Origin: Phallusia mammillata
Lineage: Eukaryota
DNA: 64,000 bases
Direction of reading: 5' to 3'
NCBI GenBank assembly: GCA_965637545.1
Contig: OZ281501.1
Span: 8,990,001-9,054,000, forward strand
The position numbers and the translations under genes are program-made. Positions 3,301-27,300 of this stretch are shown here, piece after piece. The notes beneath the pieces are model-generated. The model made no database searches and was not told where the DNA came from. It saw nothing but the letters and a program-made list of their open reading frames with translations. Positions within the stretch are counted from its first letter, which is position 1. Every line of letters begins with the position of its first letter.

Positions 3301-6300
3301 GTTTGTTATTAGTTGGTATTTTCTGGATGCCAATTGAACAACGAACCAGCTTAGTTTGCTTATATCAAATTGCAAATTAGAAAATACAACAAATATGTAC
3401 TGAATTATGTTTTAGCAACATCCTTAACCACAACAGCTAAAACCACCTCATTTCCTACCGGAAGTCCATCACCTTTGACCACAGCAGTAGTTACTAAATC
3501 TCCATCATGTGTTAAAACTGGTTGGACAGAATGGATGAGTGTTGATTCTCCACAGTTTGGTATGCTTCTTACAGTGTTTGACACACCTGTTTATAAAACT
3601 CATATTCAATTAACAGTGTGTTTTAGAGACATAAAATGGTAAAATTAAATACATATGGAGCACAGTGTTTAAAGTGCTGATAAAGTTAAATTGTTTATTT
3701 GTAATCCACCACTACTTACTGGCCTTAAAATGAGGTGAACAACCTTGCTGTTTGCTTTGTTGCAAAACATTTTGTATGTAGGGTCACCGGGCAATGACTT
3801 GGATACACTCGAAGTGCTTCGAGAAAAGTATTCATTTTGTACTGACTCCATGATTACTGACTTTGCATGTCGAATTGCGGATGATGAATACAACCACCAA
3901 CTTGTAGGTGGAAACAGTGAAAACTTTTCGTGTGACCAAAATGGTGTTTCTTGTTTACAAGAAGACCAGGTGGGTTGACATGTTTGTTTTATAGTTTGTG
4001 TGTTAAAGTTCGTGTGGTCTTTTGTTACAGCCTGCAGGCAGCTTCTGTTTTAACTTCGAAGTCCAGTTCTTCTGCCAGTGCAGAGCACTTTCCACACCAA
4101 GTTCTAGTAAGTGCCAGATACCTGGAAAATTGGTGCATAAAGTAGATTAAATAAGAAAAGGGATCATTTGATAACTTTCATAATAGGATAAAAGTATTTT
4201 GTACAGTATAACAACAAGATCTTAAACTTCTTAAATTATAAACACACACTAAAGTAATACATGTAAACCATACTTTTTGAAAAAAGTTTCCTTAATCTAC
4301 CTGTAGTTTAAGAGAAGGATAAGCACCACCTTAAAATCCATATGTAGTGAAATTAATAATTTTACTGAAAGTGTTGACCATTATAAAAATTGTATAGCCC
4401 CAACTCCATCACCAAGCACAACAACTGAAAGTTTAGTTTGCATTCCACGATGGACAAAATGGATCAACTCTGAAAAACCATCCAGATCCATTTACTCTGG
4501 TGACTTCCAGAGTTTGGACAACTTGGATGAAACATATGGATCAGAGTTCTGTTCAAGGTAATTGACATCAATCAACTTTATTTTGTGTGTGCACCAAATT
4601 GTTAACTTGCAACAAGTTTGGTCAGTTGTAACAAGTTTTTTGTTTCAAGGGAAATGATTTCTGATATTCAGTGTGTTTGTGCGCAATCTGGACAAGACTG
4701 GAAATATGCTGGTGATGAGATGCAGTGTGACTTGGAAAATGGATTAAAATGCCTCAACAGCAAACAGGTTTAGCATTAAATATATAAAATTTTAAAAACT
4801 TGCACAACAAAAAATTTTTATGGTTGAATCAAAACACCTGGTTTTACAGAAAAACTTCATGACTTGTTTTGATTACAAAGTGAGAGTTTACTGTGAGTGT
4901 GATCCAGCAAACCTCTCAACTATAGCCCAAGTAACAACCACTCCAGTGGTTACTACTAAAACAGTACCTGGTAAATATTATTTTTCTTTATGATAAAAAA
5001 CATCAAAAATAATATGTGTTAAATCATTCTATTGGTATTAAAAACATTTTTGTTCAGATTGTTTAAAAGTACTGGAAATGGGTTCCGCAGAGTTGGTGAA
5101 GATTACTGCATCTTCCACTGCTGCTAAAACAACTTTACGTAATGTTGATGTTAACTCCCAAGGTGGATGGGTTGCCAACCTCAACAACAAGTACTCAGTC
5201 CTGTACGGTTAACAAGTCTTTGGTAATTGACCATGTGTATTGCTTTAGGTACCAGTGGCTGACATTTGAACTGGATAGAATACATGAAATTGCTGGGATT
5301 AAAACAAAAGGCCACAGTCTGGGTATTGGTTGGGTTCGTCAATACACCCTTGGTTATAGTGATGATGGAGTTTACTTCCATCCCTACAAAAATCCCCAAA
5401 CAAATGAAGTTATAGTAAGAATATAAGAGTGTGTTGGGAACAGGATTTTGGGGTTAATGTTGACATTTTTAGGTATTTGATGCAAATGTGGATTCTGGCA
5501 CCGAAGTAATAAATCTGCTGCAAATGAACAACCTTATTTCAACAAAGTGGTTATGTATTCGCCCATCAGATTGGACTCTGTCTATTGCAATGAGAGCAAC
5601 AATCTTATTTTCATGCACTGGTAAGAATCTACCTTTTAAAGAAACACAAACACACACCTCAAACTTAAAGAGAACACTTAAAAATAGTGTATTTTACATT
5701 TCTTAGACAACCAGTTAACAACTGGACCTTTGTTTTCAACTACTGGTGAACGCACAACAGCGTTGGTAACTACATCTCCTTGCCAAGAAGGCTATCTTTG
5801 GAAGTCATGCGCATATAACTGTAGTAGACTTTGCCACAGCACTGCAGTACAGTATCCTGTATGTTCTTCTGATGCTGTTTATTGCATCGCTGCCTGTTTG
5901 CCACAAAATTTTACTGTAAGTTTTTTTATTTTTTTATTTAAGGTTTATAAATAGCAGCTGTATGTTGTATTGTGGTCTTACAGGCTTGTAAGTTGGGATG
6001 GAAGTTAGACAATGCTGGACGTTGTGTAAAGGCAGAAGATTGCCCATGTTACTCACCAAATGGAGTTCTGATTCCTCCAGGTAGTACTATAGTTGAAGAG
6101 GGCCAGGAATGTCTATGTTTTGGAAACACCCTAGAGTGTTCATCCGTTTCTACAACAATCAGCACTGTGGTAGGCAAATTTTCTTTTTTAGGTTTGTAAA
6201 ATTCTTTTAAAACTACAAAGTTTTGGGTACCTTTGTAAAAACAAATTTAAATCCACAAACAGTTCTAGTTTCATAAACATATATTGCAACATACCAATAT

Positions 6301-9300
6301 AATGTTTTAATTTTATGCCAGTAAGTTCTGCTTTTCTGATTTAATTACAAAAAAACAAGAACAGTGTCTTGTAGGCTGAAACAACTGCAACTACTGAAGC
6401 AGAGGTAACAACAATGTATGATGATTGTGTGTGGTGGGCCGACTGGCACAATATACGTTCACCAAGCAATGAAGCAGGTGATGATGAAGAGGGAGTTTCA
6501 GAACACACTGCAGTATCCGACTGCAAGTCACCTGTTGCAATTGAGTGCAGAGTTGCAGGATATGGTATTTCGTACCTTAGGTAAGTATTCTTTAATGTGT
6601 TGTTTCTTTTACCAGAGAAGTAGGCTAAAATAATTTGGTGTTTCTTTTTTGTTAGTATTGCATTGTCGTTGTGCTAAATTTCTCATAAGCTGGAGTTAAG
6701 TTGAACTTATGCATGTACAATGTATTCTATTGGCAGTTATCTGTTGTGTTTTTAATGTTTTAATATCACCATATTGTTTTTTTTAGATCTGGACAGAACG
6801 GTGTCCTTTGTGATCTCAAACATGGCCTGCAGTGCATTGGATTAAGGTTGTCAGGCAATATACCTAAGTGTTATGATTATGAAGTACGACTTGGATGTTA
6901 CAATGAGAGTTGCATTGTTACTACAGCTGCCACAACTCTTGGTGTCTCCAGCTCAACACCAGATGAAACCACGACAGCAAAAGTAGGCTGTAAAAGAAAT
7001 CTGCACATTTTTCATTTTTAACAAACTGATTGATTTACAGGTGACAACAGAACAAACAACTGAAACAATTAATCCATGCCCTAACTCTACAATTACCACC
7101 CCATGTCATGGATGTATGGTCAATGAATATTGCCACAATGGTGAATGCATCACAGTGGACAAATGCCCATGCATGATTGATGGAATAGCTCATGAGGCAT
7201 GTCATTTTTATGTCTATATTCTTTAATCTTTAGAACTTAAAATTAGTAAAGCTTGAGTCTTTTAGGTAATGTCCATACCAATTTTTTGACAAATGTTTTA
7301 CAGTTTTTGATTTTGATAGCTAGATTGAGTGATGACGTTGCCTTATTATTTATGTCTATTGTTATACCCTTACAAGTAAAGTACAAGTTAAGTACCAGCA
7401 CACATCAAATGAAAACTGCTACCTAACATTTTTCATTTTTAAACTACAAGTTTTGGCCCATATATTTTTACTCTGATAACGAAAAGAAAACTTTTTGAGT
7501 GTTTATTTCAGTGTTCAATTATTCGAAATATTGTGAAATTTATACAAGTGGGCTTTACAATCTCACTATTGTTTGGCCCATTCATTTCCTCACAACAATT
7601 TACCGTACCAGACTGGCATCTGCTGAAATGCACCTGCCAACCTTTCACTTCAGACAATCACTAGTATACTCATCATTAGGTCACCAAACAACAGAACTTT
7701 TTTTACTGATCTGGATTTCTTAAATACTGAAAAAATGTGCTTTTGTATGTTAAATCTAATTTGTTCTAAAAAAAATTTGTTTTTTAGGTCAACAGTATTT
7801 GGAAAAATTCTGCTCCATTATGCACCATATGTACCTGTTTTAACAATGTTGCACAGTGTGCACCACAGACATGTAACATCACTAGTGCAGACTGTTTATT
7901 TTCTGAAACATACAGCAAATCAGAAAATGAGTGTTGTGGCACGTGCAACTGTGCATGCATTGATGGAGAAAGAAGATGTGGATATGAAGGATGCGACTGT
8001 ATACCAAATGAATGGTGGTGTGATGGTTCGATAGACTGTCCAGATGGTTCTGATGAAAACCAGTGCTTTGAAACAACTCAACAACCAGTCAAAACAACCA
8101 AGATAACAGGGTGTGAAATTGATGGAGTGCATGTCGATGTTGGTGAGGAGTTAGTTAGTGACGTTTGCCACACAGCCGTTTGCATCAAAACCGGTGTGTT
8201 TGAGAAACGATATACTTGTCCCACGACCCAAAGCACCAAACCAATGGAAACAACCAAAGCCACCAAAACTACAACTGAAGAGCCTGGTTGCATGTACAAC
8301 GGCGTGCAGGTTGCTGTCGGAGTTGTTGTCGAAAACGGAACTTGTTACAAAGTTGTTTGCTATCACGACCGTGTTTTCAGGAAAGAGAGTACCTGCACAA
8401 CTCCACATAGTGTCAGTGACACAACTACACTTGGCACAACTGAAAATGTAGAAACAACCACTCGTGCTATTTCAGGCTGTTTGGTCGACGACGTGCTTCA
8501 TATGGATGTCGGAGCAGAAGTTGTTATCGACGCTTGCAACATTGCCATATGTATCAATGATGGTTTATACGAAATACGATACACGTGCAAAACACCGGAC
8601 ACCACTCCGATTACGGAAACGACCACCATTGAGAACGGATGCATCCACGACGGAGTACAGATTGCTGTTGGTGTTGTGATCGAGAATGGTACTTGTTACA
8701 AAGTGGTTTGCTACCACAACAATGTATTGAGAAACGAGACCACATGTACTACTCCACCTCAAACATCCACAGAACCGGATACAACGGCCATCACTGGTTG
8801 CGAAATCGATGGAGAGCATGTCGACGTTGGTGATGAGTTGGTTACTGACGATTGCCACACAGCCGTTTGTATTAAAAACGGTGTGTTCGAGATACGATAT
8901 ACTTGTCCCACGCCTGAAAGCACGAAACCAATGGAAACAACCAAAGCTACCGAAACTACAACTAAAGAGCCTGGTTGCATGTACAACGGCGTGCAGGTTG
9001 CTGTCGGAGTTGTTGTGGAAAACGGAACTTGTTACAAAGTTGTTTGCTATCACGACCGTGTTTTCAGGAAAGAGAGTACCTGCACAACTCCACATAGTGT
9101 CAGTGACACATCTACACTTGGCACAACTGAAACTGTAGAAACAACCACTCGTGCTATTTCAGGCTGTTTGGTCGACGGCGTGCTTCATATGGATGTCGGA
9201 GCAGAAGTTGTTATCGACGCTTGCAACATTGCCATATGTATCAATGATGGTTTATACGAAATACGATACACGTGCAAAACACCAGACACCACTCCGATTA

Positions 9301-12300
9301 CGGAAACGACCACCATTGAGAACGGATGTATCCACGACGGAGTACAGATTGCTGTTGGTGTTGTGATCGAGAATGGTACATGTTATAAAGTGGTTTGCTA
9401 CCACAACAATGTATTGAGAAACGAGACCACATGTACTACTCCACATCCGGGAACATCCACAGAATCGACTCCAACGGCCATCACTGGTTGCGAAATCGAT
9501 GGAGAACATGTCGACGTTGGTGATGAGTTGGTTACTGACGATTGCCACACAGCCGTTTGTATTAAAAACGGTGTGTTCGAGATACGATATACTTGTCCCA
9601 CGCCTGAAAGCACGAAACCAATGGAAACAACCAAAGCTACCGAAACTACAACTAAAGAGCCTGGTTGCATGTACAACGGCGTGCAGGTTGCTGTCGGAGT
9701 TGTTGTGGAAAACGGAACTTGTTACAAAGTTGTTTGCTATCACGACCGTGTTTTCAGGAAAGAGAGTACCTGCACAACTCCACATAGTGTCAGTGACACA
9801 ACTACACTTGGCACAACTGAAACTGTAGAAACAACCACTCGTGCTATTTCAGGCTGTTTGGTCGACGGCGTGCTTCATATGGATGTCGGAGCAGAAGTTG
9901 TTATCGACGCTTGCAACATTGCCATATGTATCAATGATGGTTTATACGAAATACGATACACGTGCAAAACACCAGACACCACTCCGATTACGGAAACGAC
10001 CACCATTGAGAACGGATGTATCCACGACGGAGTACAGATTGCTGTTGGTGTTGTGATCGAGAATGGTACATGTTATAAAGTGGTTTGCTACCACAACAAT
10101 GTATTGAGAAACGAGACCACATGTACTACTCCACATCCGGGAACATCCACAGAATCGACTCCAACGGCCATCACTGGTTGCGAAATCGATGGAGAACATG
10201 TCGACGTTGGTGATGAGTTGGTTACTGACGATTGCCACACAGCCGTTTGTATTAAAAACGGTGTGTTCGAGATACGATATACTTGTCCCACGACCGAAAT
10301 CACCAAACCCAATGAAACAACCGAAGCCACTGAAACTACAACTAAAGAGCCTGGTTGCATGTACAACGGCGTGCAGGTTGCTGTCGGAGTTGTTGTGGAA
10401 AACGGAACTTGTTACAAAGTTGTTTGCTATCACGACCGTGTTTTCAGGAAAGAGAGTACCTGCACAACTCCACATAGTGTCAGTGACACAACTACACTTG
10501 GCACAACTGAAACTGTAGAAACAACCACTCGTGCTATTTCAGGCTGTTTGGTCGACGGCGTGCTTCATATGGATGTCGGAGCAGAAGTTGTTATCGACGC
10601 TTGCAACATTGCCATATGTATCAATGATGGTTTATACGAAATACGATACACGTGCAAAACACCAGACACCACTCCGATTACGGAAACGACCACCATTGAG
10701 AACGGATGCATCCACGACGGAGTACAGATTGCTGTTGGTGTTGTGATCGAGAATGGTACATGTTATAAAGTGGTTTGCTACCACAACAATGTATTGAGAA
10801 ACGAGACCACATGTACTACTCCACATCCGGGAACATCCACAGAATCGACTCCAACGGCCATCACTGGTTGCGAAATCGATGGAGAGCATGTCGACGTTGG
10901 TGATGAGTTGGTTACTGACGATTGCCACACAGCCGTTTGTATTAAAAACGGTGTGTTCGAGATACGATATACTTGTCCCACGCCTGAAAGCACGAAACCA
11001 ATCGAAACAACCAAAGCTACCGAAACTACAACTAAAGAGCCTGGTTGCATGTACAACGGCGTCCAGGTTGCTGTCGGAGTTGTTGTCGAAAACGGAACTT
11101 GTTACAAAGTTGTTTGCTATCACGACCGTGTTTTCAGGAAAGAGAGTACCTGCACAACTCCACATAGTGTCAGTGACACAACTACACTTGGCACAACTGA
11201 AACTGTAGAAACAACCACTCGTGCTATTTCAGGCTGTTTGGTCGACGGCGTGCTTCATATGGATGTCGGAGCAGAAGTTGTTATCGACGCTTGCAACGTT
11301 GCCATATGTATCAATGATGGTTTATACGAAATACGATACACGTGCAAAACACCAGACACCACTCCGATTACGGAAACGACCACCATTGAGAACGGATGTA
11401 TCCACGACGGAGTACAGATTGCTGTTGGTGTTGTGATCGAGAATGGTACATGTTATAAAGTGGTTTGCTACCACAACAATGTATTGAGAAACGAGACCAC
11501 ATGTACTACTCCACATCCGGGAACATCCACAGAATCGACTCCAACGGCCATCACTGGTTGCGAAATCGATGGAGAACATGTCGACGTTGGTGATGAGTTG
11601 GTTACTGACGATTGCCACACAGCCGTTTGTATTAAAAACGGTGTGTTCGAGATACGATATACTTGTCCCACGACCCAAAGCACCAAACCAATGGAAACAA
11701 CCAAAGCTACCGAAACTACAACTAAAGAGCCTGGTTGCATGTACAACGGCGTCCAGGTTGCTGTCGGAGTTGTTGTGGAAAACGGAACTTGTTACAAAGT
11801 TGTTTGCTATCACGACCGTGTTTTCAGGAAAGAGAGTACCTGCACAACTCCGCATAGTGACACAACTACACTTGGCACAACTGAAACTGTAGAAACAACC
11901 ACTCGTGCTATTTCAGGCTGTTTGGTCGACGGCGTGCTTCATATGGATGTCGGAGCAGAAGTTGTTATCGACGCTTGCAACATTGCCATATGTATCAATG
12001 ATGGTTTATACGAAATACGATACACGTGCAAAACACCAGACACCACTCCGATTACGGAAACGACCACCATTGAGAACGGATGCATCCACGACGGAGTACA
12101 GATTGCTGTTGGTGTTGTGATCGAGAATGGTACATGTTATAAAGTGGTTTGCTACCACAACAATGTATTGAGAAACGAGACCACATGTACTACTCCACAT
12201 CCGGGAACATCCACAGAATCGACTCCAACGGCCATCACTGGTTGCGAAATCGATGGAGAGCATGTCGACGTTGGTGATGAGTTGGTTACTGACGATTGCC

Positions 12301-15300
12301 ACACAGCCGTTTGTATTAAAAACGGTGTGTTCGAGATACGATATACTTGTCCCACGACCGAAAGCACCAAACCCAATGAAGCAACCGAAGCCACTGAAAC
12401 TACAACTAAAGAGCCTGGTTGCATGTACAACGGCGTCCAGGTTGCTGTCGGAGTTGTTGTGGAAAACGGAACTTGTTACAAAGTTGTTTGCTATCACGAC
12501 CGTGTTTTCAGGAAAGAGAGTACCTGCACAACTCCGTATATTGACACAACTACACTTGGCACAACTGAAACTGTAGAAACAACCACTCGTGCTATTTCAG
12601 GCTGTTTGGTCGACGGCGTGCTTCATATGGATGTCGGAGCAGAAGTTGTTATCGACGCTTGCAACATTGCCATATGTATCAATGATGGTTTATACGAAAT
12701 ACGATACACGTGCAAAACACCAGACACCACTCCGATTACGGAAACGACCACCATTGAGAACGGATGCATCCACGACGGAGTACAGATTGCTGTTGGTGTT
12801 GTGATCGAGAATGGTACATGTTATAAAGTGGTTTGCTACCACAACAATGTATTGAGAAACGAGACCACATGTACTACTCCACATCCGGGAACATCCACAG
12901 AATCGACTCCAACGGCCATCACTGGTTGCGAAATCGATGGAGAGCATGTCGACGTTGGTGATGAGTTGGTTACTGACGATTGCCACACAGCCGTTTGTAT
13001 TAAAAACGGTGTGTTCGAGATACGATATACTTGTCCCACGACCGAAAGCACCAAACCCAATGAAGCAACCGAAGCCACTGAAACTACAACTAAAGAGCCT
13101 GGTTGCATGTACAACGGCGTGCAGGTTGCTGTCGGAGTTGTTGTGGAAAACGGAACTTGTTACAAAGTTGTTTGCTATCACGACCGTGTTTTCAGGAAAG
13201 AGAGTACCTGCACAACTCCGTATATTGACACAACTACACTTGGCACAACTGAAACTGTAGAAACAACCACTCGTGCTATTTCAGGCTGTTTGGTCGACGG
13301 CGTGCTTCATATGGATGTCGGAGCAGAAGTTGTTATCGACGCTTGCAACATTGCCATATGTATCAATGATGGTTTATACGAAATACGATACACGTGCAAA
13401 ACACCAGACACCACTCCGATTACGGAAACGACCACCATTGAGAACGGATGCATCCACGACGGAGTACAGATTGCTGTTGGTGTTGTGATCGAGAATGGTA
13501 CATGTTATAAAGTGGTTTGCTACCACAACAATGTATTGAGAAACGAGACCACATGTACTACTCCACATCCGGGAACATCCACAGAATCGACTCCAACGGC
13601 CATCACTGGTTGCGAAATCGATGGAGAGCATGTCGACGTTGGTGATGAGTTGGTTACTGACGATTGCCACACAGCCGTTTGTATTAAAAACGGTGTGTTC
13701 GAGATACGATATACTTGTCCCACGCCTGAAAGCACGAAACCAATCGAAACAACCAAAGCTACCGAAACTACAACTAAAGAGCCTGGTTGCATGTACAACG
13801 GCGTCCAGGTTGCTGTCGGAGTTGTTGTCGAAAACGGAACTTGTTACAAAGTTGTTTGCTATCACGACCGTGTTTTCAGGAAAGAGAGTACCTGCACAAC
13901 TCCACATAGTGTCAGTGACACAACTACACTTGGCACAACTGAAACTGTAGAAACAACCACTCGTGCTATTTCAGGCTGTTTGGTCGACGGCGTGCTTCAT
14001 ATGGATGTCGGAGCAGAAGTTGTTATCGACGCTTGCAACATTGCCATATGTATCAATGATGGTTTATACGAAATACGATACACGTGCAAAACACCAGACA
14101 CCACTCCGATTACGGAAACGACCACCATTGAGAACGGATGTATCCACGACGGAGTACAGATTGCTGTTGGTGTTGTGATCGAGAATGGTACATGTTATAA
14201 AGTGGTTTGCTACCACAACAATGTATTGAGAAACGAGACCACATGTACTACTCCACATCCGGGAACATCCACAGAATCGACTCCAACGGCCATCACTGGT
14301 TGCGAAATCGATGGAGAGCATGTCGACGTTGGTGATGAGTTGGTTACTGACGATTGCCACACAGCCGTTTGTATTAAAAACGGTGTGTTCGAGATACGAT
14401 ATACTTGTCCCACGACCGAAAGCACCAAACCCAATGAAGCAACCGAAGCCACTGAAACTACAACTAAAGAGCCTGGTTGCATGTACAACGGCGTGCAGGT
14501 TGCTGTCGGAGTTGTTGTGGAAAACGGAACTTGTTACAAAGTTGTTTGCTATCACGACCGTGTTTTCAGGAAAGAGAGTACCTGCACAACTCCGTATATT
14601 GACACAACTACACTTGGCACAACTGAAACTGTAGAAACAACCACTCGTGCTATTTCAGGCTGTTTGGTCGACGGCGTGCTTCATATGGATGTCGGAGCAG
14701 AAGTTGTTATCGACGCTTGCAACATTGCCATATGTATCAATGATGGTTTATACGAAATACGATACACGTGCAAAACACCAGACACCACTCCGATTACGGA
14801 AACGACCACCATTGAGAACGGATGCATCCACGACGGAGTACAGATTGCTGTTGGTGTTGTGATCGAGAATGGTACATGTTATAAAGTGGTTTGCTACCAC
14901 AACAATGTATTGAGAAACGAGACCACATGTACTACTCCACATCCGGGAACATCCACAGAATCGACTCCAACGGCCATCACTGGTTGCGAAATCGATGGAG
15001 AGCATGTCGACGTTGGTGATGAGTTGGTTACTGACGATTGCCACACAGCCGTTTGTATTAAAAACGGTGTGTTCGAGATACGATATACTTGTCCCACGAC
15101 CGAAAGCACCAAACCCAATGAAGCAACCGAAGCCACTGAAACTACAACTAAAGAGCCTGGTTGCATGTACAACGGCGTGCAGGTTGCTGTCGGAGTTGTT
15201 GTGGAAAACGGAACTTGTTACAAAGTTGTTTGCTATCACGACCGTGTTTTCAGGAAAGAGAGTACCTGCACAACTCCACATAGTGTCAGTGACACAACTA

Positions 15301-18300
15301 CACTTGGCACAACTGAAACTGTAGAAACAACCACTCGTGCTATTTCAGGCTGTTTGGTCGACGGCGTGCTTCATATGGATGTCGGAGCAGAAGTTGTTAT
15401 CGACGCTTGCAACATTGCCATATGTATCAATGATGGTTTATACGAAATACGATACACGTGCAAAACACCAGACACCACTCCGATTACGGAAACGACCACC
15501 ATTGAGAACGGATGTATCCACGACGGAGTACAGATTGCTGTTGGTGTTGTGATCGAGAATGGTACATGTTATAAAGTGGTTTGCTACCACAACAATGTAT
15601 TGAGAAACGAGACCACATGTACTACTCCACATCCGGGAACATCCACAGAATCGACTCCAACGGCCATCACTGGTTGCGAAATCGATGGAGAGCATGTCGA
15701 CGTTGGTGATGAGTTGGTTACTGACGATTGCCACACAGCCGTTTGTATTAAAAACGGTGTGTTCGAGATACGATATACTTGTCCCACGACCGAAAGCACC
15801 AAACCCAATGAAGCAACCGAAGCCACTGAAACTACAACTAAAGAGCCTGGTTGCATGTACAACGGCGTGCAGGTTGCTGTCGGAGTTGTTGTGGAAAACG
15901 GAACTTGTTACAAAGTTGTTTGCTATCACGACCGTGTTTTCAGGAAAGAGAGTACCTGCACAACTCCGCATAGTGTCAGTGACACAACTACACTTGGCAC
16001 AACTGAAACTGTAGAAACAACCACTCGTGCTATTTCAGGCTGTTTGGTCGACGGCGTGCTTCATATGGATGTCGGAGCAGAAGTTGTTATCGACGCTTGC
16101 AACGTTGCCATATGTATCAATGATGGTTTATACGAAATACGATACACGTGCAAAACACCAGACACCACTCCGATTACGGAAACGACCACCATTGAGAACG
16201 GATGCATCCACGACGGAGTACAGATTGCTGTTGGTGTTGTGATCGAGAATGGTACATGTTATAAAGTGGTTTGCTACCACAACAATGTATTGAGAAACGA
16301 GACCACATGTACTACTCCACATCCGGGAACATCCACAGAATCGACTCCAACGGCCATCACTGGTTGCGAAATCGATGGAGAGCATGTCGACGTTGGTGAT
16401 GAGTTGGTTACTGACGATTGCCACACAGCCGTTTGTATTAAAAACGGTGTGTTCGAGATACGATATACTTGTCCCACGACCGAAAGCACCAAACCCAATG
16501 AAGCAACCGAAGCCACTGAAACTACAACTAAAGAGCCTGGTTGCATGTACAACGGCGTGCAGGTTGCTGTCGGAGTTGTTGTGGAAAACGGAACTTGTTA
16601 CAAAGTTGTTTGCTATCACGACCGTGTTTTCAGGAAAGAGAGTACCTGCACAACTCCACATAGTGTCAGTGACACAACTACACTTGGCACAACTGAAACT
16701 GTAGAAACAACCACTCGTGCTATTTCAGGCTGTTTGGTCGACGGCGTGCTTCATATGGATGTCGGAGCAGAAGTTGTTATCGACGCTTGCAACATTGCCA
16801 TATGTATCAATGATGGTTTATACGAAATACGATACACGTGCAAAACACCAGACACCACTCCGATTACGGAAACGACCACCATTGAGAACGGATGCATCCA
16901 CGACGGAGTACAGATTGCTGTTGGTGTTGTGATCGAGAATGGTACATGTTATAAAGTGGTTTGCTACCACAACAATGTATTGAGAAACGAGACCACATGT
17001 ACTACTCCACATCCGGGAACATCCACAGAATCGACTCCAACGGCCATCACTGGTTGCGAAATCGATGGAGAGCATGTCGACGTTGGTGATGAGTTGGTTA
17101 CTGACGATTGCCACACAGCCGTTTGTATTAAAAACGGTGTGTTCGAGATACGATATACTTGTCCCACGACCGAAAGCACCAAACCCAATGAAGCAACCGA
17201 AGCCACTGAAACTACAACTAAAGAGCCTGGTTGCATGTACAACGGCGTGCAGGTTGCTGTCGGAGTTGTTGTGGAAAACGGAACTTGTTACAAAGTTGTT
17301 TGCTATCACGACCGTGTTTTCAGGAAAGAGAGTACCTGCACAACTCCGCATAGTGTCAGTGACACAACTACACTTGGCACAACTGAAACTGTAGAAACAA
17401 CCACTCGTGCTATTTCAGGCTGTTTGGTCGACGGCGTGCTTCATATGGATGTCGGAGCAGAAGTTGTTATCGACGCTTGCAACGTTGCCATATGTATCAA
17501 TGATGGTTTATACGAAATACGATACACGTGCAAAACACCAGACACCACTCCGATTACGGAAACGACCACCATTGAGAACGGATGCATCCACGACGGAGTA
17601 CAGATTGCTGTTGGTGTTGTGATCGAGAATGGTACATGTTATAAAGTGGTTTGCTACCACAACAATGTATTGAGAAACGAGACCACATGTACTACTCCAC
17701 ATCCGGGAACATCCACAGAATCGACTCCAACGGCCATCACTGGTTGCGAAATCGATGGAGAGCATGTCGACGTTGGTGATGAGTTGGTTACTGACGATTG
17801 CCACACAGCCGTTTGTATTAAAAACGGTGTGTTCGAGATACGATATACTTGTCCCACGACCGAAAGCACCAAACCCAATGAAGCAACCGAAGCCACTGAA
17901 ACTACAACTAAAGAGCCTGGTTGCATGTACAACGGCGTGCAGGTTGCTGTCGGAGTTGTTGTGGAAAACGGAACTTGTTACAAAGTTGTTTGCTATCACG
18001 ACCGTGTTTTCAGGAAAGAGAGTACCTGCACAACTCCGTATATTGACACAACTACACTTGGCACAACTGAAACTGTAGAAACAACCACTCGTGCTATTTC
18101 AGGCTGTTTGGTCGACGGCGTGCTTCATATGGATGTCGGAGCAGAAGTTGTTATCGACGCTTGCAACATTGCCATATGTATCAATGATGGTTTATACGAA
18201 ATACGATACACGTGCAAAACACCAGACACCACTCCGATTACGGAAACGACCACCATTGAGAACGGATGCATCCACGACGGAGTACAGATTGCTGTTGGTG

Positions 18301-21300
18301 TTGTGATCGAGAATGGTACATGTTATAAAGTGGTTTGCTACCACAACAATGTATTGAGAAACGAGACCACATGTACTACTCCACATCCGGGAACATCCAC
18401 AGAATCGACTCCAACGGCCATCACTGGTTGCGAAATCGATGGAGAGCATGTCGACGTTGGTGATGAGTTGGTTACTGACGATTGCCACACAGCCGTTTGT
18501 ATTAAAAACGGTGTGTTCGAGATACGATATACTTGTCCCACGACCGAAAGCACCAAACCCAATGAAGCAACCGAAGCCACTGAAACTACAACTAAAGAGC
18601 CTGGTTGCATGTACAACGGCGTGCAGGTTGCTGTCGGAGTTGTTGTGGAAAACGGAACTTGTTACAAAGTTGTTTGCTATCACGACCGTGTTTTCAGGAA
18701 AGAGAGTACCTGCACAACTCCGTATATTGACACAACTACACTTGGCACAACTGAAACTGTAGAAACAACCACTCGTGCTATTTCAGGCTGTTTGGTCGAC
18801 GGCGTGCTTCATATGGATGTCGGAGCAGAAGTTGTTATCGACGCTTGCAACATTGCCATATGTATCAATGATGGTTTATACGAAATACGATACACGTGCA
18901 AAACACCAGACACCACTCCGATTACGGAAACGACCACCATTGAGAACGGATGTATCCACGACGGAGTACAGATTGCTGTTGGTGTTGTGATCGAGAATGG
19001 TACATGTTATAAAGTGGTTTGCTACCACAACAATGTATTGAGAAACGAGACCACATGTACTACTCCACATCCGGGAACATCCACAGAATCGACTCCAACG
19101 GCCATCACTGGTTGCGAAATCGATGGAGAGCATGTCGACGTTGGTGATGAGTTGGTTACTGACGATTGCCACACAGCCGTTTGTATTAAAAACGGTGTGT
19201 TCGAGATACGATATACTTGTCCCACGACCGAAAGCACCAAACCCAATGAAGCAACCGAAGCCACTGAAACTACAACTAAAGAGCCTGGTTGCATGTACAA
19301 CGGCGTGCAGGTTGCTGTCGGAGTTGTTGTGGAAAACGGAACTTGTTACAAAGTTGTTTGCTATCACGACCGTGTTTTCAGGAAAGAGAGTACCTGCACA
19401 ACTCCGTATATTGACACAACTACACTTGGCACAACTGAAACTGTAGAAACAACCACTCGTGCTATTTCAGGCTGTTTGGTCGACGGCGTGCTTCATATGG
19501 ATGTCGGAGCAGAAGTTGTTATCGACGCTTGCAACATTGCCATATGTATCAATGATGGTTTATACGAAATACGATACACGTGCAAAACACCAGACACCAC
19601 TCCGATTACGGAAACGACCACCATTGAGAACGGATGCATCCACGACGGAGTACAGATTGCTGTTGGTGTTGTGATCGAGAATGGTACATGTTATAAAGTG
19701 GTTTGCTACCACAACAATGTATTGAGGAACGAGACCACATGTACTACTCCACATCCGGGAACATCCACAGAATCGACTCCAACGGCCATCACTGGTTGCG
19801 AAATCGATGGAGAGCATGTCGACGTTGGTGATGAGTTGGTTACTGACGATTGCCACACAGCCGTTTGTATTAAAAACGGTGTGTTCGAGATACGATATAC
19901 TTGTCCCACGACCGAAATCACCAAACCCAATGAAGCAACCGAAGCCACTGAAACTACAACTAAAGAGCCTGGTTGCATGTACAACGGCGTGCAGGTTGCT
20001 GTCGGAGTTGTTGTGGAAAACGGAACTTGTTACAAAGTTGTTTGCTATCACGACCGTGTTTTCAGGAAAGAGAGTACCTGCACAACTCCGTATATTGACA
20101 CAACTACACTTGGCACAACTGAAACTGTAGAAACAACCACTCGTGCTATTTCAGGCTGTTTGGTCGACGGCGTGCTTCATATGGATGTCGGAGCAGAAGT
20201 TGTTATCGACGCTTGCAACATTGCCATATGTATCAATGATGGTTTATACGAAATACGATACACGTGCAAAACACCAGATACCACTCCGATTACGGAAACG
20301 ACCACCATTGAGAACGGATGCATCCACGACGGAGTACAGATTGCTGTTGGTGTTGTGATCGAGAATGGTACATGTTATAAAGTGGTTTGCTACCACAACA
20401 ATGTATTGAGAAACGAGACCACATGTACTACTCCACATCCGGGAACATCCACAGAATCGACTCCAACGGCCATCACTGGTTGCGAAATCGATGGAGAGCA
20501 TGTCGACGTTGGTGATGAGTTGGTTACTGACGATTGCCACACAGCCGTTTGTATTAAAAACGGTGTGTTCGAGATACGATATACTTGTCCCACGACCGAA
20601 ATCACCAAACCCAATGAAGCAACCGAAGCCACTGAAACTACAACTAAAGAGCCTGGTTGCATGTACAACGGCGTGCAGGTTGCTGTCGGAGTTGTTGTGG
20701 AAAACGGAACTTGTTACAAAGTTGTTTGCTATCACGACCGTGTTTTCAGGAAAGAGAGTACCTGCACAACTCCGTATATTGACACAACTACACTTGGCAC
20801 AACTGAAACTGTAGAAACAACCACTCGTGCTATTTCAGGCTGTTTGGTCGACGGCGTGCTTCATATGGATGTCGGAGCAGAAGTTGTTATCGACGCTTGC
20901 AACATTGCCATATGTATCAATGATGGTTTATACGAAATACGATACACGTGCAAAACACCAGACACCACTCCGATTACGGAAACGACCACCATTGAGAACG
21001 GATGCATCCACGACGGAGTACAGATTGCTGTTGGTGTTGTGATCGAGAATGGTACATGTTATAAAGTGGTTTGCTACCACAACAATGTATTGAGAAACGA
21101 GACCACATGTACTACTCCACATCCGGGAACATCCACAGAATCGACTCCAACGGCCATCACTGGTTGCGAAATCGATGGAGAGCATGTCGACGTTGGTGAT
21201 GAGTTGGTTACTGACGATTGCCACACAGCCGTTTGTATTAAAAACGGTGTGTTCGAGATACGATATACTTGTCCCACGACCGAAAGCACCAAACCCAATG

Positions 21301-24300
21301 AAGCAACCGAAGCCACTGAAACTACAACTAAAGAGCCTGGTTGCATGTACAACGGCGTGCAGGTTGCTGTCGGAGTTGTTGTGGAAAACGGAACTTGTTA
21401 CAAAGTTGTTTGCTATCACGACCGTGTTTTCAGGAAAGAGAGTACCTGCACAACTCCGCATAGTGTCAGTGACACAACTACACTTGGCACAACTGAAACT
21501 GTAGAAACAACCACTCGTGCTATTTCAGGCTGTTTGGTCGACGGCGTGCTTCATATGGATGTCGGAGCAGAAGTTGTTATCGACGCTTGCAACGTTGCCA
21601 TATGTATCAATGATGGTTTATACGAAATACGATACACGTGCAAAACACCAGACACCACTCCGATTACGGAAACGACCACCATCGAGAACGGATGTATCCA
21701 CGACGGAGTACAGATTGCTGTTGGTGTTGTGATCGAGAATGGTACATGTTATAAAGTGGTTTGCTACCACAACAATGTATTGAGAAACGAGACCACATGT
21801 ACTACTCCACATCCGGGAACATCCACAGAATCGACTCCAACGGCCATCATTGGTTGCGAAATCGATGGAGAGCATGTCGACGTTGGTGATGAGTTGGTTA
21901 CTGACGATTGCCACACAGCCGTTTGTATTAAAAACGGTGTGTTTGAGATACGATATACTTGTCCCACGACCGAAATCACCAAACCCAATGAAGCAACCGA
22001 AGCCACTGAAACTACAACTAAAGAGCCTGGTTGCATGTACAACGGCGTGCAGGTTGCTGTCGGAGTTGTTGTGGAAAACGGAACTTGTTACAAAGTTGTT
22101 TGCTATCACGACCGTGTTTTCAGGAAAGAGAGTACCTGCACAACTCCGTATATTGACACAACTACACTTGGCACAACTGAAACTGTAGAAACAACCACTC
22201 GTGCTATTTCAGGCTGTTTGGTCGACGGCGTGCTTCATATGGATGTCGGAGCAGAAGTTGTTATCGACGCTTGCAACATTGCCATATGTATCAATGATGG
22301 TTTATACGAGATACGATACACGTGCAAAACACCAGACACCACTCCGATTACGGAAACGACCACCATTGAGAACGGATGCATCCACGACGGAGTACAGATT
22401 GCTGTTGGTGTTGTGATCGAGAATGGTACATGTTATAAAGTGGTTTGCTACCACAACAATGTATTGAGAAACGAGACCACATGTACTACTCCACATCCGG
22501 GAACATCCACAGAATCGACTCCAACGGCCATCACTGGTTGCGAAATCGATGGAGAGCATGTCGACGTTGGTGATGAGTTGGTTACTGACGATTGCCACAC
22601 AGCCGTTTGTATTAAAAACGGTGTGTTCGAGATACGATATACTTGTCCCACGACCGAAATCACCAAACCCAATGAAGCAACCGAAGCCACTGAAACTACA
22701 ACTAAAGAGCCTGGTTGCATGTACAACGGCGTGCAGGTTGCTGTCGGAGTTGTTGTGGAAAACGGAACTTGTTACAAAGTTGTTTGCTATCACGACCGTG
22801 TTTTCAGGAAAGAGAGTACCTGCACAACTCCGTATATTGACACAACTACACTTGGCACAACTGAAACTGTAGAAACAACCACTCGTGCTATTTCAGGCTG
22901 TTTGGTCGACGGCGTGCTTCATATGGATGTCGGAGCAGAAGTTGTTATCGACGCTTGCAACGTTGCCATATGTATCAATGATGGTTTATACGAAATACGA
23001 TACACGTGCAAAACACCAGACACCACTCCGATTACGGAAACGACCACCATTGAGAACGGATGCATTCACGACGGAGTACAGATTGCTGTTGGTGTTGTGA
23101 TCGAGAATGGTACATGTTATAAAGTGGTTTGCTACCACAACAATGTATTGAGAAACGAGACCACATGTACTACTCCACATCCGGGAACATCCACAGAATC
23201 GACTCCAACGGCCATCAATGGTTGCGAAATCGATGGAGAGCATGTCGACGTTGGTGATGAGTTGGTTACTGACGATTGCCACACAGCCGTTTGTATTAAA
23301 AACGGTGTGTTCGAGATACGATATACTTGTCCCACGACCGAAAGCACCAAACCCATTGAAACAACCGAAGCCACTGAAACTACAACTAAAGAGCCTGGTT
23401 GCATGTACAACGGTGTGCAGGTTGCTGTCGGAGTTGTTGTGGAAAACGGAACTTGTTACAAAGTTGTTTGCTATCACGACCGTGTTTTCAGGAAAGAGAG
23501 TACCTGCACAACTCCGCATAGTGACACAACTACACTTGGCACAACTGAAACTGTAGAAACAACCACTCGTGCTATTTCAGGCTGTTTGGTCGACGGCGTG
23601 CTTCATATGGATGTCGGAGCAGAAGTTGTTATCGACGCTTGCAACGTTGCCATATGTATCAATGATGGTTTATACGAAATACGATACACGTGCAAAACAC
23701 CAGACACCACTCCGATTACGGAAACGACCACCATTGAGAACGGATGTATCCACGACGGAGTACAGATTGCTGTTGGTGTTGTGATCGAGAATGGTACATG
23801 TTATAAAGTGGTTTGCTACCACAACAATGTATTGAGAAACGAGACCACATGTACTACTCCACATCCGGGAACATCCACAGAATCGACTCCAACGGCCATC
23901 ACTGGTTGCGAAATCGATGGAGAGCATGTCGACGTTGGTGATGAGTTGGTTACTGACGATTGCCACACAGCCGTTTGTATTAAAAACGGTGTGTTCGAGA
24001 TACGATATACTTGTCCCACGACCGAAAGCACCAAACCCATTGAAACAACCGAAGCCACTGAAACTACAACTAAAGAGCCTGGTTGCATGTACAACGGCGT
24101 GCAGGTTGCTGTCGGAGTTGTTGTGGAAAACGGAACTTGTTACAAAGTTGTTTGCTATCACGACCGTGTTTTCAGGAAAGAGAGTACCTGCACAACTCCA
24201 CATAGTGTCAGTGACACAACTACACTTGGCACAACTGAAACTGTAGAAACAACCACTCGTGCTATTTCAGGCTGTTTGGTCGACGGCGTGCTTCATATGG

Positions 24301-27300
24301 ATGTCGGAGCAGAAGTTGTTATCGACGCTTGCAACATTGCCATATGTATCAATGATGGTTTATACGAAATACGATACACGTGCAAAACACCAGACACCAC
24401 TCAGATTACAGAAACGACCACCATTGAGAACGGATGTATCCACGACGGAGTACAGATTGCTGTTGGTGTTGTGATCGAGAATGGTACATGTTATAAAGTG
24501 GTTTGCTACCACAACAATGTATTGAGAAACGAGACCACATGTACTACTCCACATCCGGGAACATCCACAGAATCGACTCCAACGGCCATCACTGGTTGCG
24601 AAATCGATGGAGAGCATGTCGACGTTGGTGATGAGTTGGTTACTGACGATTGCCACACAGCTGTTTGTATTAAAAACGGTGTGTTCGAGATACGATATAC
24701 TTGTCCCACGCCTGTAACCACGAAACCGATAAAAACAACCGAATCCACAGAGGTCACGGACACAACTGAAACTATAACTAAAGAGCCTGGTTGCATGTAC
24801 AACGGCGTGCAGGTTGCTGTCGGAGTTGTTGTGGAAAACGGAACTTGTTACAAAGTGATTTGTTTTAGGGATTATGTAATTAGAAATGAAACGACCTGCA
24901 CAACTGCATCTGTTTTGTCTTCTTCTACCACCCCTGCTGTTGGTACTACAACATCATCTCATACATCTGGTTGTATTTTCGAAAAATCGTACTACCCAGT
25001 CGGTGGAGTTCATGCGTTGGATGATGTATGCATGCTTTTATCGTTATTTCTAGCAAATGTGTTTTTTCTGATTATAATGTGTTTTAGGGTTGTGGTTCAT
25101 GCGAGTGTTTGGGAAGTGGAAAATGGAGTTGCAATACTGAAACTTGTGATCGAGAATGCATCATGTTTTCTGGCGATAGTTTCCGCACTTTTGATGGTTT
25201 AACCTTTTCCTATGATATTTGCTCTAACATCTTGGTGAAGGACTGCTATGGTCACGAATTTGAAGTGATAGGTAAGTTTCGTATTGTAGCTGTAGTCTAC
25301 TGAATTCACTGACCGGTTCATTGTTTTCGCAATTTGATGAATTCTCAAACTCGTGCTTTCAGTGTCTTTGGATTGCACATATATTCGTGGAAAACAACAT
25401 TGCAGAAAGTACTTGGATATAACCGTTGGATCTTTCAACATCATTTTGCCAAGTCGTCTTTACCTTCGCATAAATGGCCAAGCTTACCGCCTGCGATATC
25501 TCCCAAAAATTAACGGCTTGTTTAAATCCTTTGGGTGAGTGTTGGAAAATGTCAAGTACTAACAATTCTTAACTTTACAATGTTTGGATATAAAGGGAGA
25601 ATATAAGCATTGAATATGCTGGAGGCGAGATAATAGTCAGGACCGATCATTTCTACATCATGTGGAATCCAAAAACGCAACATGCAAGAAGTGTTGTTGA
25701 CGATACTTTGGCAGGTACTGAACTTCTTAGACTTACGTCAGTTATGATACACGTATTTTTTAATGTGAAGTGGTGGAGAGAAATAATATTTTTAGAATGT
25801 TATTTTATGATGTACCAAACGTTACATTACAGGTAAAACCTGTGGTTTGTGTTCGAATGATGATAGTAACCTGGAAGATGAACTTGAAATGCCTAACAAA
25901 CAGCTGGCTGAAACTGTTGACCAATTCGCGGACTCGTGGGCAGTTGCAGGTGAATCATGCGATGAACTACCAACTTGCACCGAGGAACAGCGGCTTCAGG
26001 CATTTGAATCCTGCAACCAACTAAGGTTATTTTTGGAAAAAACGTATTTTTTATTATTGTGGGATTGGCAAACATTCTTCTTGTCATACATTTGCCATTA
26101 ATTTTTTTTAAGTGGAACATTCTAGCATCTTTTCATGCATTCAAGTACGGGGATAATTTTAAGGTGAGTTACGCTCAACATTATTTCTTTCCAGAAACGC
26201 CGTGTTCTCTGATTGTGACACAGTTCTTCCTGTGGACGAGTTTTTACCGGCTTGCATGGCGTCATTTTGCGAGTGTAGCACCAACTCGTCCATGGATAAC
26301 GAACAGTGTCAGTGTGCTGTATTGGCCCAGTATGTAGAATCGTGCCAGCGACGCCTGGGAAAAGCAGTTGATAAATCATGGAGATATGATTTGGAATGTG
26401 GTAAGAATTCACTTGTGTGAGATAATGTTTTACTGTATTACCTAAATTTATAAACTGTCCGACGGCTTTTGTATGGTACATTTATGCTGTGACTGTGAGA
26501 CACCCTAAAATGGATTTAATTCAGTGGTCAGGGCACATCCTCGAATTTTATTTAGTGGTAACAGCAATGATGATTTTATGTGGCATGTTGTTGTATAGAG
26601 CCGCCATGTCCAGGCGGAGAGATTTGGCACGAATGCCATTCTGCTTGCCCAACCACCTGCCAGAACATGATGACTAGCACCCGCTATGAGATTGAACAAA
26701 ATTGCCAACCAGAATGCGTTTCTGGGTGCTTTTGCCCGGAGGGAGAAGTTTTGGATGGTGATGTGTGTAAAAAACCTGAAGAGTGCGATGAGTGTAAGCA
26801 AGAAGTGAATTAGTTGCCTTCTAACATATAATTTTGTATTTCGGCGAATGTATGCGTCTATTCAAGAAAAAAATAGTTGAATTTTTCCCTTTTAGGCACT
26901 TGCATCGGTTGGGGCGATCCTCATTACATGACTTACGACGAAAGGTATTTCCCCTTCCAAGGAAATTGCACCTATGTGTTGTCGAAACCGATTGAAGGAG
27001 ATGATTTTGAAATTCTTGGTCACAATGAGCCCTGCACGGTGGACCCTGTAACATCTTGCACGAAAGCCATCACTGTGATTTACAACAACCACGAAGTAAC
27101 GCTAATGCGAGACCGTAAGGTACAAAATCAGTAGCGGAGGCAATTGCTGATTTAAAGAGAACTAATGTGTTTACAATTTAGGTTACGTTTGATGGAAAAT
27201 ATGTTGCGCTGCCACTTAATGGTGACATTTCCGTATCTTCGGTAAACTCCAAACTGGTACTAACCGTGAACAAAATTAACCTTTACGTTGAGTTTGACGA

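What the first reader, a model, noticed from the sequence alone, without database searches (positions are those of the whole stretch)
8109..25150. Repeat modules look like VWF E (FnI-like) modules that lost exactly the C3-C5 disulfide pair
Seen: the module right after the array has six Cys (GC1[17 protein letters not shown]|GC2GSC3EC4LGSGKWSC5NTETC6). Array modules align to it with C1, C2, C4 and C6 kept and C3 and C5 replaced (e.g. GC1EIDG..DDC2HTAVC4[12 protein letters not shown]6). Established: in the VWF E' module the pairings are C1-C4, C2-C6 and C3-C5. Inference: paired loss of one bond leaves a fully oxidised two-disulfide beta module, which implies a folded domain under selection and an origin from the adjacent E module.
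Basis: partly seen in the sequence, partly recalled or inferred. Interest (0 to 1): 0.75.

Follow-up and report, generated by a model that had tools for sequence, protein, structure and literature searches.

The report
Two-disulfide E-type beads in mucin

Summary
Observation confirmed. The exon 7788-25025 (+) holds 98 modules of 37-38 residues. Each has exactly four Cys (C-x17/18-C-x4-C-x11-C) and they are joined by Thr-rich linkers. The module after the array, spliced across a 62-nt intron, has six Cys and runs straight into a VWD domain. Pairwise and profile alignments place the array cysteines on C1, C2, C4 and C6 of that module.

Fold claim supported. AlphaFold without templates gives confident five-strand beta modules (pLDDT 88 and 93.5). 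Their best matches in the whole PDB are fibronectin type I modules, mucin and VWF E modules, and VWC N-terminal subdomains. The hairpin register fits only the bonds C1-C4 and C2-C6 (E numbering). No bond was measured.

Selection supported: synonymous sites between module types are saturated while amino acids are conserved.

Origin from the adjacent module is not supported. Outside the cysteines that module is never the nearest relative. Its intron position differs from E1, E2 and E'. The same four-Cys type also occurs in a chiton protein, in two metagenome proteins, in another gene of this genome, and directly after E3 of human MUC5AC.

Verdict: a lineage-specific, hugely amplified variant of a known module kind. 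Other first-stage notes of this scan cover this same stretch; none covers other DNA.

The parts
7788..7955 (+). Start of the giant exon: C-terminal part of a VWC domain. Its first half lies in the previous exon, which ends at 7211.
   Evidence: Pfam VWC E 1e-5, profile positions 12-57 of 57. A unique splice 7211 to 7788 gives the six-Cys VWC N-half.
7956..8066 (+). LDL-receptor class A module, followed by a short Thr-rich linker (8067-8108) that leads into the array
   Evidence: Pfam Ldl_recept_a, residues 57-93 of the exon, E 0.037, below threshold. The acidic Cys motif is readable in the sequence.
8109..24899 (+). Array of 98 four-Cys modules (types A, B, C, D; 37-38 residues each) with Thr/Pro/Glu-rich linkers of 16-28 residues. 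There are 24.5 super-repeats of 684/690 nt.
   Evidence: AlphaFold models of type A (8796-8906) and type D (9324-9434).
24900..24965 (+). Last Ser/Thr-rich linker before the six-Cys module
   Evidence: Translation
24966..25025 (+). First half of the six-Cys post-array module (C1 and the first strands); end of the giant exon
25026..25087 (+). 62-nt intron, GT...AG, phase 0, lying just before the Gly-C2 of the module
   Evidence: Sequence; unique splice solution
25088..25147 (+). Second half of the six-Cys module (C2 to C6)
25148..25270 (+). Start of the first C-terminal VWD domain. VWD-C8-TIL, a second VWD-C8-TIL, VWC domains and a cystine knot follow up to about 32711.
   Evidence: Pfam VWD E 3.8e-4 for the exon; downstream exons read; TIL E 1.2e-10
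6047..6139 (+). E/TILa-like module after a TIL with four Cys in the other register (C1, C3, C4, C5). This is the complementary loss of C2+C6.
   Evidence: Pfam TILa E 0.0075, below threshold; Cys spacing C-x20-C-x1-C-x6-C and no Cys in the next 10 residues

Best explanation
The 98 repeat units are small, independently folded beta modules of the E / VWC-N-terminal / fibronectin-I-like fold. Each is held by two disulfides, Cys1-Cys3 and Cys2-Cys4 of the module, which correspond to C1-C4 and C2-C6 of a six-Cys E module. The C3-C5 bond is absent.

The modules belong to a four-Cys form of this fold that is older than this gene's array. That form also occurs in a chiton protein, in two metagenome proteins, in another gene of this genome, and after E3 of human MUC5AC. 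Two old pairs of module types (A/C and B/D) were assembled into a four-module unit, and that unit was recently amplified about 24-fold.

In the protein the beads alternate with short linkers that are probably O-glycosylated. I infer that they form a stiff, fully oxidised, protease-resistant beaded rod in the place where gel-forming mucins usually carry a plain PTS domain. The gene's layout is three N-terminal VWD assemblies plus two C-terminal ones, and it ends in a cystine knot. What is shown: the sequence pattern, the predicted fold, the relatives and the selection. What is inferred: the bonds, the glycosylation and the mechanical role.
For: Pattern: 98 modules, 392 Cys, none in a linker.

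Fold:
- AlphaFold2 without templates, on an alignment that contains no six-Cys module, gives pLDDT 88.0 (type A) and 93.5 (type D). Both have the same five strands.
- Second look at the Foldseek hits: fibronectin 6FnI Z 4.6, rmsd 1.7 A over 36 of 37 residues; VWF E3 (1198-1238) Z 4.2; MUC2 E3 (1188-1225) Z 3.6; VWF E' (828-862) Z 3.4.
- Search of 48,161 PDB representatives without Foldseek: 17 of the top 18 are FnI, E, VWC or microseminoprotein modules.
- ESM Atlas neighbours are mostly VWC-bearing clusters.

Bonds: strands 21-27 and 30-35 form a hairpin, so residue 20 faces residue 37 and residue 25 faces residue 32. Cys20-Cys37 is therefore feasible. Cys25-Cys37 and Cys20-Cys25 are not, which leaves Cys2-Cys25 (inferred). 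Complementary paired loss of C2+C6 occurs in the module at 6047-6139.

Relatives:
- In an exhaustive phmmer search of 1.84 billion representatives the only hits are two proteins made of four-Cys modules on Pro/Thr linkers (E 1e-8 and 9e-6). One is a chiton 'kielin/chordin-like' protein carrying Pfam Fn1_2 and DUF7210.
- The joint profile hits human MUC5AC at E 2.8e-7. The best stretch is a four-Cys module ten residues after the matched part of E3.
- hhalign of window modules against mollusc modules scores 27.3, against 4.6 +/- 1.9 for controls.
- A four-Cys module of the mollusc type lies behind an LDLa module in another gene of this genome.

Selection: within the array, modules carry 25 synonymous and 15 non-synonymous variant codons (p 2.5e-8 against neutrality); linkers carry 9 and 15 (not significant). 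A vs C gives pS 0.87 and pN 0.20; B vs D gives pS 0.82 and pN 0.13.

Role: E and TIL modules are described as disulfide-rich spacers in MUC2 (PMC7599080).
Against: - The bond map rests on register and analogy.
- The structural Z-scores are low (at most 4.6) because the module has only 37 residues, and the Foldseek E-values are all above 0.4.
- The window-only profile finds nothing in the PDB by sequence. Pfam gives only sub-threshold VWC and Fn1_2 hits.
- The link to E modules by sequence therefore runs partly through the mollusc modules.
- The phmmer hits may owe part of their score to the shared Thr/Pro linkers and tandem layout.
- The three groups (window, mollusc, own E modules) are about equally distant in hhalign (19-27). 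Convergent loss of the same Cys pair is not excluded.
- There are no expression, glycosylation or protein data, and no orthologue from another ascidian could be examined.
Confidence: 0.62

Rival explanations
1. One reading: the array arose in place by duplication of the neighbouring six-Cys module, followed by one paired loss of C3 and C5 before amplification.
For: The two are adjacent. Their Cys register is identical and the C2-to-C4 spacing is equal (4 residues), with a nearly equal C4-to-C6 spacing (11 vs 12). Types A and C share the small Asp-Asp / Val-Gly motifs with it.
Against: With the cysteines excluded, the adjacent module is never the best match (z 0.9-1.8). E3, E1 and the mollusc four-Cys modules score higher (z 3.4-5.1). 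The residues at the former C3 position (Ala or Val) are two mutational steps from Cys. Synonymous sites between module types are saturated, so any such event is old. The four-Cys state occurs in other genes and phyla.
Confidence: 0.15
2. Convergence: E-type modules lose the C3-C5 pair repeatedly, so the tunicate, mollusc and MUC5AC four-Cys modules are independent derivatives of local six-Cys modules (E3 or E1, say) and not one old class.
For: hhalign scores between the three groups are similar (19.0, 25.9 and 27.3). Type A is closest to this gene's own E3 and type C to its E1. The same gene also shows the other paired loss, C2+C6, so pair loss is evidently easy in this fold.
Against: Six-Cys E and VWC proteins are very common, yet the only hits in 1.84 billion representatives are four-Cys bead proteins. 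Types B and D are closest to mollusc four-Cys modules. A mollusc-type four-Cys module is conserved between this tunicate and a chiton at z 7-8.4, so at least one four-Cys lineage is ancient.
Confidence: 0.25
3. The modules do not form the predicted intramodule bonds. Neighbouring modules are instead cross-linked, or the cysteines pair sequentially, giving a different fold or a covalently laddered rod.
For: Nothing was measured. AlphaFold can impose a familiar fold on short Cys-rich sequences.
Against: Two module types with only 35% identity give the same confident fold without templates. The hairpin register excludes sequential pairing. Each module has an even number of Cys. The 16-28-residue Thr-rich linkers separate the modules.
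Confidence: 0.07

Closest known systems
E module of VWF and gel-forming mucins (Pfam TILa, PF12714), e.g. VWF E' 828-863 and MUC2 E3
   Same: Same predicted five-strand fold. VWF E' aligns over 35 of 37 residues at rmsd 2.0-2.1 A, and MUC2 E3 over 37 at 1.7 A. The register of C1, C2, C4 and C6 is the same, as are the Gly after the first hairpin and the overall length. In MUC2 these modules are described as disulfide-rich spacers (PMC7599080).
   Different: Four Cys instead of six, so no C3-C5 bond. The module is not preceded by a TIL; it sits between Thr-rich linkers. It is present 98 times in tandem. There is no Pfam TILa hit.
VWD4N / VWCN module before VWD4 in VWF and MUC2 (PMC10082768), and VWC N-terminal subdomains
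   Same: The six-Cys module after the array occupies the same position, directly before the first C-terminal VWD. VWC N-halves (collagen IIA, CCN3) are among the best structural matches to the array modules. The weak Pfam VWC hit covers profile positions 1-38 of 57 only.
   Different: The array modules and the post-array module lack the second VWC subdomain, and the array modules also lack C3 and C5. MUC2 VWCN carries an extra Cys for dimerisation. These modules have no odd Cys.
Fibronectin type I module (finger domain)
   Same: Top structural matches: fibronectin 6FnI at Z 4.6, other fibronectin FnI modules, and the factor XII and tPA finger domains. Both have two disulfides and about 40 residues.
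   Different: FnI has a C-x-C motif, and its two bonds correspond to C1-C4 and C3-C5 of an E module (my own knowledge of FnI and VWC structures; not checked in a paper here). The array keeps C1-C4 and C2-C6 instead. Pfam Fn1_2 reaches only E 0.09-0.3. The module at 6047-6139 is the one with the FnI register.
Four-Cys modules on Pro/Thr linkers: chiton 'kielin/chordin-like' protein P0001 (Pfam Fn1_2 + DUF7210), the metagenome proteins P0002 and P0003, and the four-Cys module after E3 in human MUC5AC
   Same: Same Cys spacing class (C-x17-23-C-x3-4-C-x10-13-C). Same beads-on-a-glycosylated-string layout in P0001-P0003. They are the only sequence relatives found.
   Different: Identity is only 22-35%. 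Those modules carry a Tyr-x-Pro-Gly and often a Trp-Cys-Tyr-Gly signature that the array lacks. They have 5-18 modules per protein, not 98, and no VWD framework in P0001-P0003. MUC5AC has a single copy, and it was not resolved in the cryo-EM maps.
CysD (Mucin2_WxxW) domains that interrupt PTS regions of MUC2 and MUC5
   Same: Folded, disulfide-bonded modules interspersed in the glycosylated centre of a gel-forming mucin. This gene also has CysD domains upstream.
   Different: An unrelated fold and a larger size (about 100 residues, 10 Cys). CysD domains are sparse, whereas here a bead occurs every 53-65 residues.

Membership tests
E module (TILa) | Six Cys with the C2-x2-C3-x-C4 motif and three disulfides | tested here: not met
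   The array modules have four Cys, with C3 and C5 replaced.
E module (TILa) | FnI-like five-strand fold that superposes on solved E modules | tested here: met
   Z 3.4-4.2, rmsd 1.7-2.4 A over 35-37 residues on VWF E' and E3 and on MUC2 E3.
E module (TILa) | Follows a TIL module inside a D assembly | tested here: not met
   Each module is flanked by Thr-rich linkers.
E module (TILa) | Reaches the Pfam TILa gathering score | tested here: not met
   No TILa hit at E up to 10 for a super-repeat or for single modules.
Fibronectin type I | Cys pattern C...C-x-C...C with bonds 1-3 and 2-4 (the equivalents of E C1-C4 and C3-C5) | tested here: not met
   The spacing between the two middle Cys is 4, not 1, and the last Cys aligns with E C6.
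Fibronectin type I | Pfam fn1 / Fn1_2 score above threshold | tested here: not met
   Fn1_2 scores 11.6-13.5 bits against a cut-off of 27.
VWC domain | Ten Cys in two subdomains, ending in the CC-x-x-C motif | tested here: not met
   Only the N-terminal subdomain is matched (profile positions 1-38 of 57; 17.6 bits against a cut-off of 27.6).
Four-Cys E-like bead class (chiton P0001 type; Pfam Fn1_2 / DUF7210 in part) | C-x17-23-C-x3-4-C-x10-13-C module with Gly after the first hairpin, flanked by Pro/Thr linkers | tested here: met
   Alignment A1: the four Cys and one Gly are invariant in 23 modules. phmmer E 1e-8. hhalign 27.3 against 4.6 +/- 1.9 in controls.
Four-Cys E-like bead class (chiton P0001 type; Pfam Fn1_2 / DUF7210 in part) | Common descent of the four-Cys state rather than convergent loss | tested here: inconclusive
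   hhalign distances among window, mollusc and own E modules are similar, and 36 residues are too few for a tree.
Any of the above | Disulfide connectivity Cys1-Cys3 and Cys2-Cys4 within a module | not testable with these tools
   Inferred only from strand register and superposition ranges.

The most novel reading that the evidence does not exclude
There is an unnamed, ancient two-disulfide 'E-minus' module class (C1-C4 and C2-C6 only). It occurs in molluscs, tunicates and human MUC5AC and serves as a building block for beaded, glycosylated rods. This sea-squirt gene then shows its extreme use: a mucin centre built of 98 folded beads instead of a disordered PTS domain. The complementary paired Cys losses within one gene would act as a natural map of E-module disulfides.
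Probability: 0.4. Interest if true: 0.5.

Novelty: new variant of a known kind. Interest (0 to 1): 0.4.

Why it matters
Gel-forming mucins are usually pictured as globular ends joined by a disordered sugar-coated centre. Here the centre is a chain of about a hundred small folded modules, which should change its stiffness, its extensibility under force and its resistance to proteases. It also offers a natural, very simple two-disulfide version of the E / VWC-N fold for folding and mechanics studies.

The same four-Cys form sits, apparently unnamed, between E3 and the first PTS of human MUC5AC, a stretch that the cryo-EM maps could not resolve. The tunicate and mollusc modules give an alignment and a confident model for it. 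The paired losses (C3+C5 in the array, C2+C6 at 6047-6139) support the accepted E-module disulfide map from sequence alone.

Tried and rejected
The repeats were parsed by pattern instead.
- phmmer of a super-repeat, and a window-only module profile, against PDB sequences gave only chance hits.
- The word-indexed protein search with the whole exon (region 100-800) found no protein of 3,160-10,000 residues. With the chiton protein as query it added only P0003.
- The ESM Atlas feature search gave no usable hit.
- Searches for papers naming PF23003, DUF7210 or the MUC5AC four-Cys module found nothing relevant.
- The exact E' cysteine pairings could not be found in the papers held. Only the E' and E3 residue ranges were confirmed. 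Zhou et al. 2012 is not held.
- The own-genome search with a super-repeat found only the array itself.
- A first shuffle control timed out and was rerun in parallel.
It was redone from coordinates.
- The spliced six-Cys module was not sent to Pfam, AlphaFold or the database searches. Only its two exons were searched, each on its own.
- No contig that I take for human was met. Human proteins appear only as PDB entries.


Full report
WHAT IS THERE

The window is AT-rich (34-40% G+C) except for 8-24 kb, which is 46%. It has only one long open frame, 7788-25202 on the + strand. Earlier notes of this scan call the genome a sea squirt. I did not test that, but the short GT-AG introns fit an invertebrate chordate.

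Six-frame reading and Pfam scans show one large gene on the + strand.
- Upstream of the window (L013) lie D assemblies with TIL and E modules.
- In the window, in order: PTS repeats, CysD domains, an F5/8 type C-like exon, TIL modules, a VWC, an LDLa module and the array.
- After the array: VWD-C8-TIL, a second VWD-C8-TIL, VWC domains and a cystine knot.
- This is the '3 + 2 VWD' layout with F5/8-C that Lang et al. describe for hemolectin-like mucin relatives (PMC4948705).

THE OBSERVATION

The array (8109-24899) holds 98 modules of 37-38 residues with the spacing C-x17/18-C-x4-C-x11-C.
- There are four types: A and B occur 25 times each, C and D 24 times each.
- They form 24.5 super-repeats of 684 or 690 nt that are 93-100% identical to one another. 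The truncated last half-unit is 59% identical.
- All 392 Cys lie in modules.
- The linkers are 16-28 residues long and 41% Thr.

The exon ends at 25025. Within the donor and acceptor ranges I searched, one GT-AG pair (intron 25026-25087, 62 nt) yields a six-Cys module that runs into a VWD start. The two exons are in different frames, so splicing is required.

Both pairwise alignment and profile alignment show this.

Column-shuffle controls that keep the Cys register score 5.7 +/- 2.4. The real score against the gene's own six-Cys modules is 19.0, and 0 of 48 shuffles reach it. The resemblance is therefore more than a cysteine pattern.

THE FOLD

I aligned the window modules with the four-Cys modules of the only database relatives (alignment A1). 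I folded type A, and then type D from the same sequences reordered (alignment A3). No templates were used and no six-Cys sequence was in the input.

Both models are confident (pLDDT 88.0 and 93.5). Both have strands at about 2-4, 7-9, 14-17, 21-27 and 30-35.

Foldseek gives no significant E-value for so short a query. Its first 17 rows are nonetheless almost all collagen IIA or CCN3 VWC, MUC2, VWF and MUC5AC.

Re-alignment of those hits:
- fibronectin 6FnI: Z 4.6, rmsd 1.7 A over 36 residues
- VWF E3 (1198-1238): Z 4.2
- MUC2 E3 (1188-1225): Z 3.6
- VWF E' (828-862): Z 3.4

These ranges coincide with the published limits of E' (828-863) and E3 (1197-1252) (PMC10196764).

A search that does not depend on Foldseek, against 48,161 PDB representatives, puts FnI, E, VWC and beta-microseminoprotein modules in 17 of its first 18 places. 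The Atlas neighbours are mostly VWC-bearing clusters.

THE BONDS

Strands 21-27 and 30-35 form a hairpin with a two-residue turn.
- Residue 20 therefore lies opposite residue 37, and residue 25 opposite residue 32.
- Cys20-Cys37 is natural in this register.
- Cys25-Cys37 and Cys20-Cys25 are about five residues out of register.
- That leaves Cys2-Cys25, which joins the first hairpin to the central strand as in E and FnI modules.

In E numbering these bonds are C1-C4 and C2-C6.

I could not find it spelled out in a paper held here.

The gene itself offers independent support. The TILa-like module at 6047-6139 keeps C1, C3, C4 and C5 and lacks C2 and C6. Cysteines are thus lost as exactly the pairs that this map predicts.

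One correction to the title of the finding. The array pattern is not that of fibronectin type I. FnI keeps the equivalents of C1-C4 and C3-C5 (my knowledge of FnI and VWC structures). The module at 6047-6139 has the FnI register; the array has the other one.

SELECTION

Among the near-identical copies:
- Modules carry 25 synonymous and 15 non-synonymous variant codons on 96 synonymous and 351 non-synonymous sites (binomial p 2.5e-8 against neutrality).
- Linkers carry 9 and 15, which does not differ from neutrality.

Between module types, synonymous sites are saturated while amino acids are kept:
- A vs C: pS 0.87, pN 0.20
- B vs D: pS 0.82, pN 0.13

The four types are therefore old, the 24-fold amplification or homogenisation is recent, and the modules are constrained as protein.

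ORIGIN

(i) With the cysteines masked, the adjacent module is the nearest relative of none of the four types (z 0.9-1.8). Type A is nearest to the gene's E3 (z 3.8) and type C to E1 (z 3.8). Types B and D are nearest to mollusc four-Cys modules (z 3.4-5.1).

(ii) E1, E2 and E' share a phase-2 intron inside the C3 codon. The post-array module has a phase-0 intron four codons earlier, and E3 has yet another position. By position the post-array module is the counterpart of VWD4N, renamed VWCN in MUC2 (PMC10082768). It is not a TIL-linked E module.

(iii) The four-Cys state is not local to this array.
- An exhaustive phmmer search of 1.84 billion representatives with one super-repeat returns only two proteins (E 1e-8 and 9e-6). 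Both are strings of four-Cys modules on Pro/Thr linkers.
- One is a chiton 'kielin/chordin-like' protein that Pfam labels Fn1_2 and DUF7210. A third protein of this kind came from a follow-up search.
- The joint profile hits human MUC5AC in the PDB sequence set at E 2.8e-7. Weaker partial matches fall on its other E modules. The best stretch is a four-Cys module ten residues after the matched part of E3.
- That region was too flexible to model in the MUC5AC structures. I found no name for it in the two MUC5AC structure papers.
- In this same genome, another gene (L017) has an LDLa module, then a Thr/Pro linker, then a single four-Cys module. That module is very close to the chiton ones (z 7-8.4). 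The LDLa-linker-module context is the same as at the start of the array.

At least one four-Cys lineage is therefore ancient. Whether the array modules descend from it or lost the pair independently cannot be settled with 36 residues: the hhalign scores among the three groups are 19.0, 25.9 and 27.3.

HOW IT PROBABLY WORKS

Much of this is inferred. Each bead is a rigid, fully oxidised beta module with no spare thiol. Types B and D carry Asn-x-Thr sites. The linkers are of mucin type and probably O-glycosylated.

With D assemblies upstream and a cystine knot at the C-terminal end, the protein should polymerise like other gel-forming mucins. The array would form a long beaded rod that is stiffer and more protease-resistant than a plain PTS domain. 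This fits the role of E and TIL modules as disulfide-rich spacers in MUC2 (PMC7599080).

The tissue is unknown, and I found no paper describing such an array.

LIMITS

- No bond, transcript or protein was observed.
- Structural Z-scores are low in absolute terms because the domain is tiny.
- The window-only profile has no significant hit to Pfam or PDB sequences.
- No other ascidian genome could be searched, and the window's own protein is not in the protein libraries.
- The copy number of a near-perfect 690-nt repeat depends on the assembly.
- The spliced six-Cys module was analysed only in local scripts. The joined sequence was not submitted to any search or folding tool.

VERDICT

The proposed origin from the neighbouring module is not. 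This is a lineage-specific, massively amplified variant of a known module kind and a member of a little-noticed four-Cys subclass.

Noticed in passing
window 6047-6139: A TILa-like module after a TIL has four Cys in the FnI register (C1, C3, C4, C5). This is the complementary paired loss (C2+C6) to the one in the array, within the same gene.
   Followed up: partly
L017 1468-1920 (G000:C2:13831742-13832194): Another gene of this genome has an LDLa module, a Thr/Pro linker, one four-Cys module split by an intron, then PTS. That module is very close to the chiton four-Cys modules (z 7-8.4). VWC, LDLa and TIL exons lie around it, so the gene may be SCO-spondin-like.
   Followed up: partly
L013 2380/2453, 4564/4669, 6793/6955 (G000:C8:8980001-8990000): The E1, E2 and E' modules of this gene share an intron in phase 2 inside the codon of C3. 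E3 (8872/9011) and the post-array module have different intron positions.
   Followed up: partly
PDB chains 9gvj_A, 8qtb_A and 8qsp_A (human MUC5AC), chain positions 1250-1291 in 9gvj_A: Human MUC5AC carries a four-Cys E-like module just after E3 and before the first PTS. It has the same Cys spacing class as the array modules. It was not resolved, and as far as I found not named, in the two structure papers I searched.
   Followed up: partly
window 8796-9485 (module types A-D): The proportion of synonymous differences between module types is 0.82-0.94, above the 0.75 expected at saturation. This may be small numbers (about 24 sites), or pressure to keep neighbouring modules dissimilar at the DNA level.
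   Followed up: no
window 1-33000 plus L013: The whole gene has the '3 + 2 VWD' layout with an F5/8 type C exon (about 5100-5423), CysD domains, an LDLa module and two C-terminal VWD-C8-TIL assemblies. There is no E module between the first C-terminal TIL (26574-26810) and the second VWD (26877-).
   Followed up: partly
window 61866-62818, minus strand: Two overlapping open frames of 167-171 residues, not Cys-rich, lie in the 3' flank. They may be remnants of a mobile element. I did not examine them.
   Followed up: no
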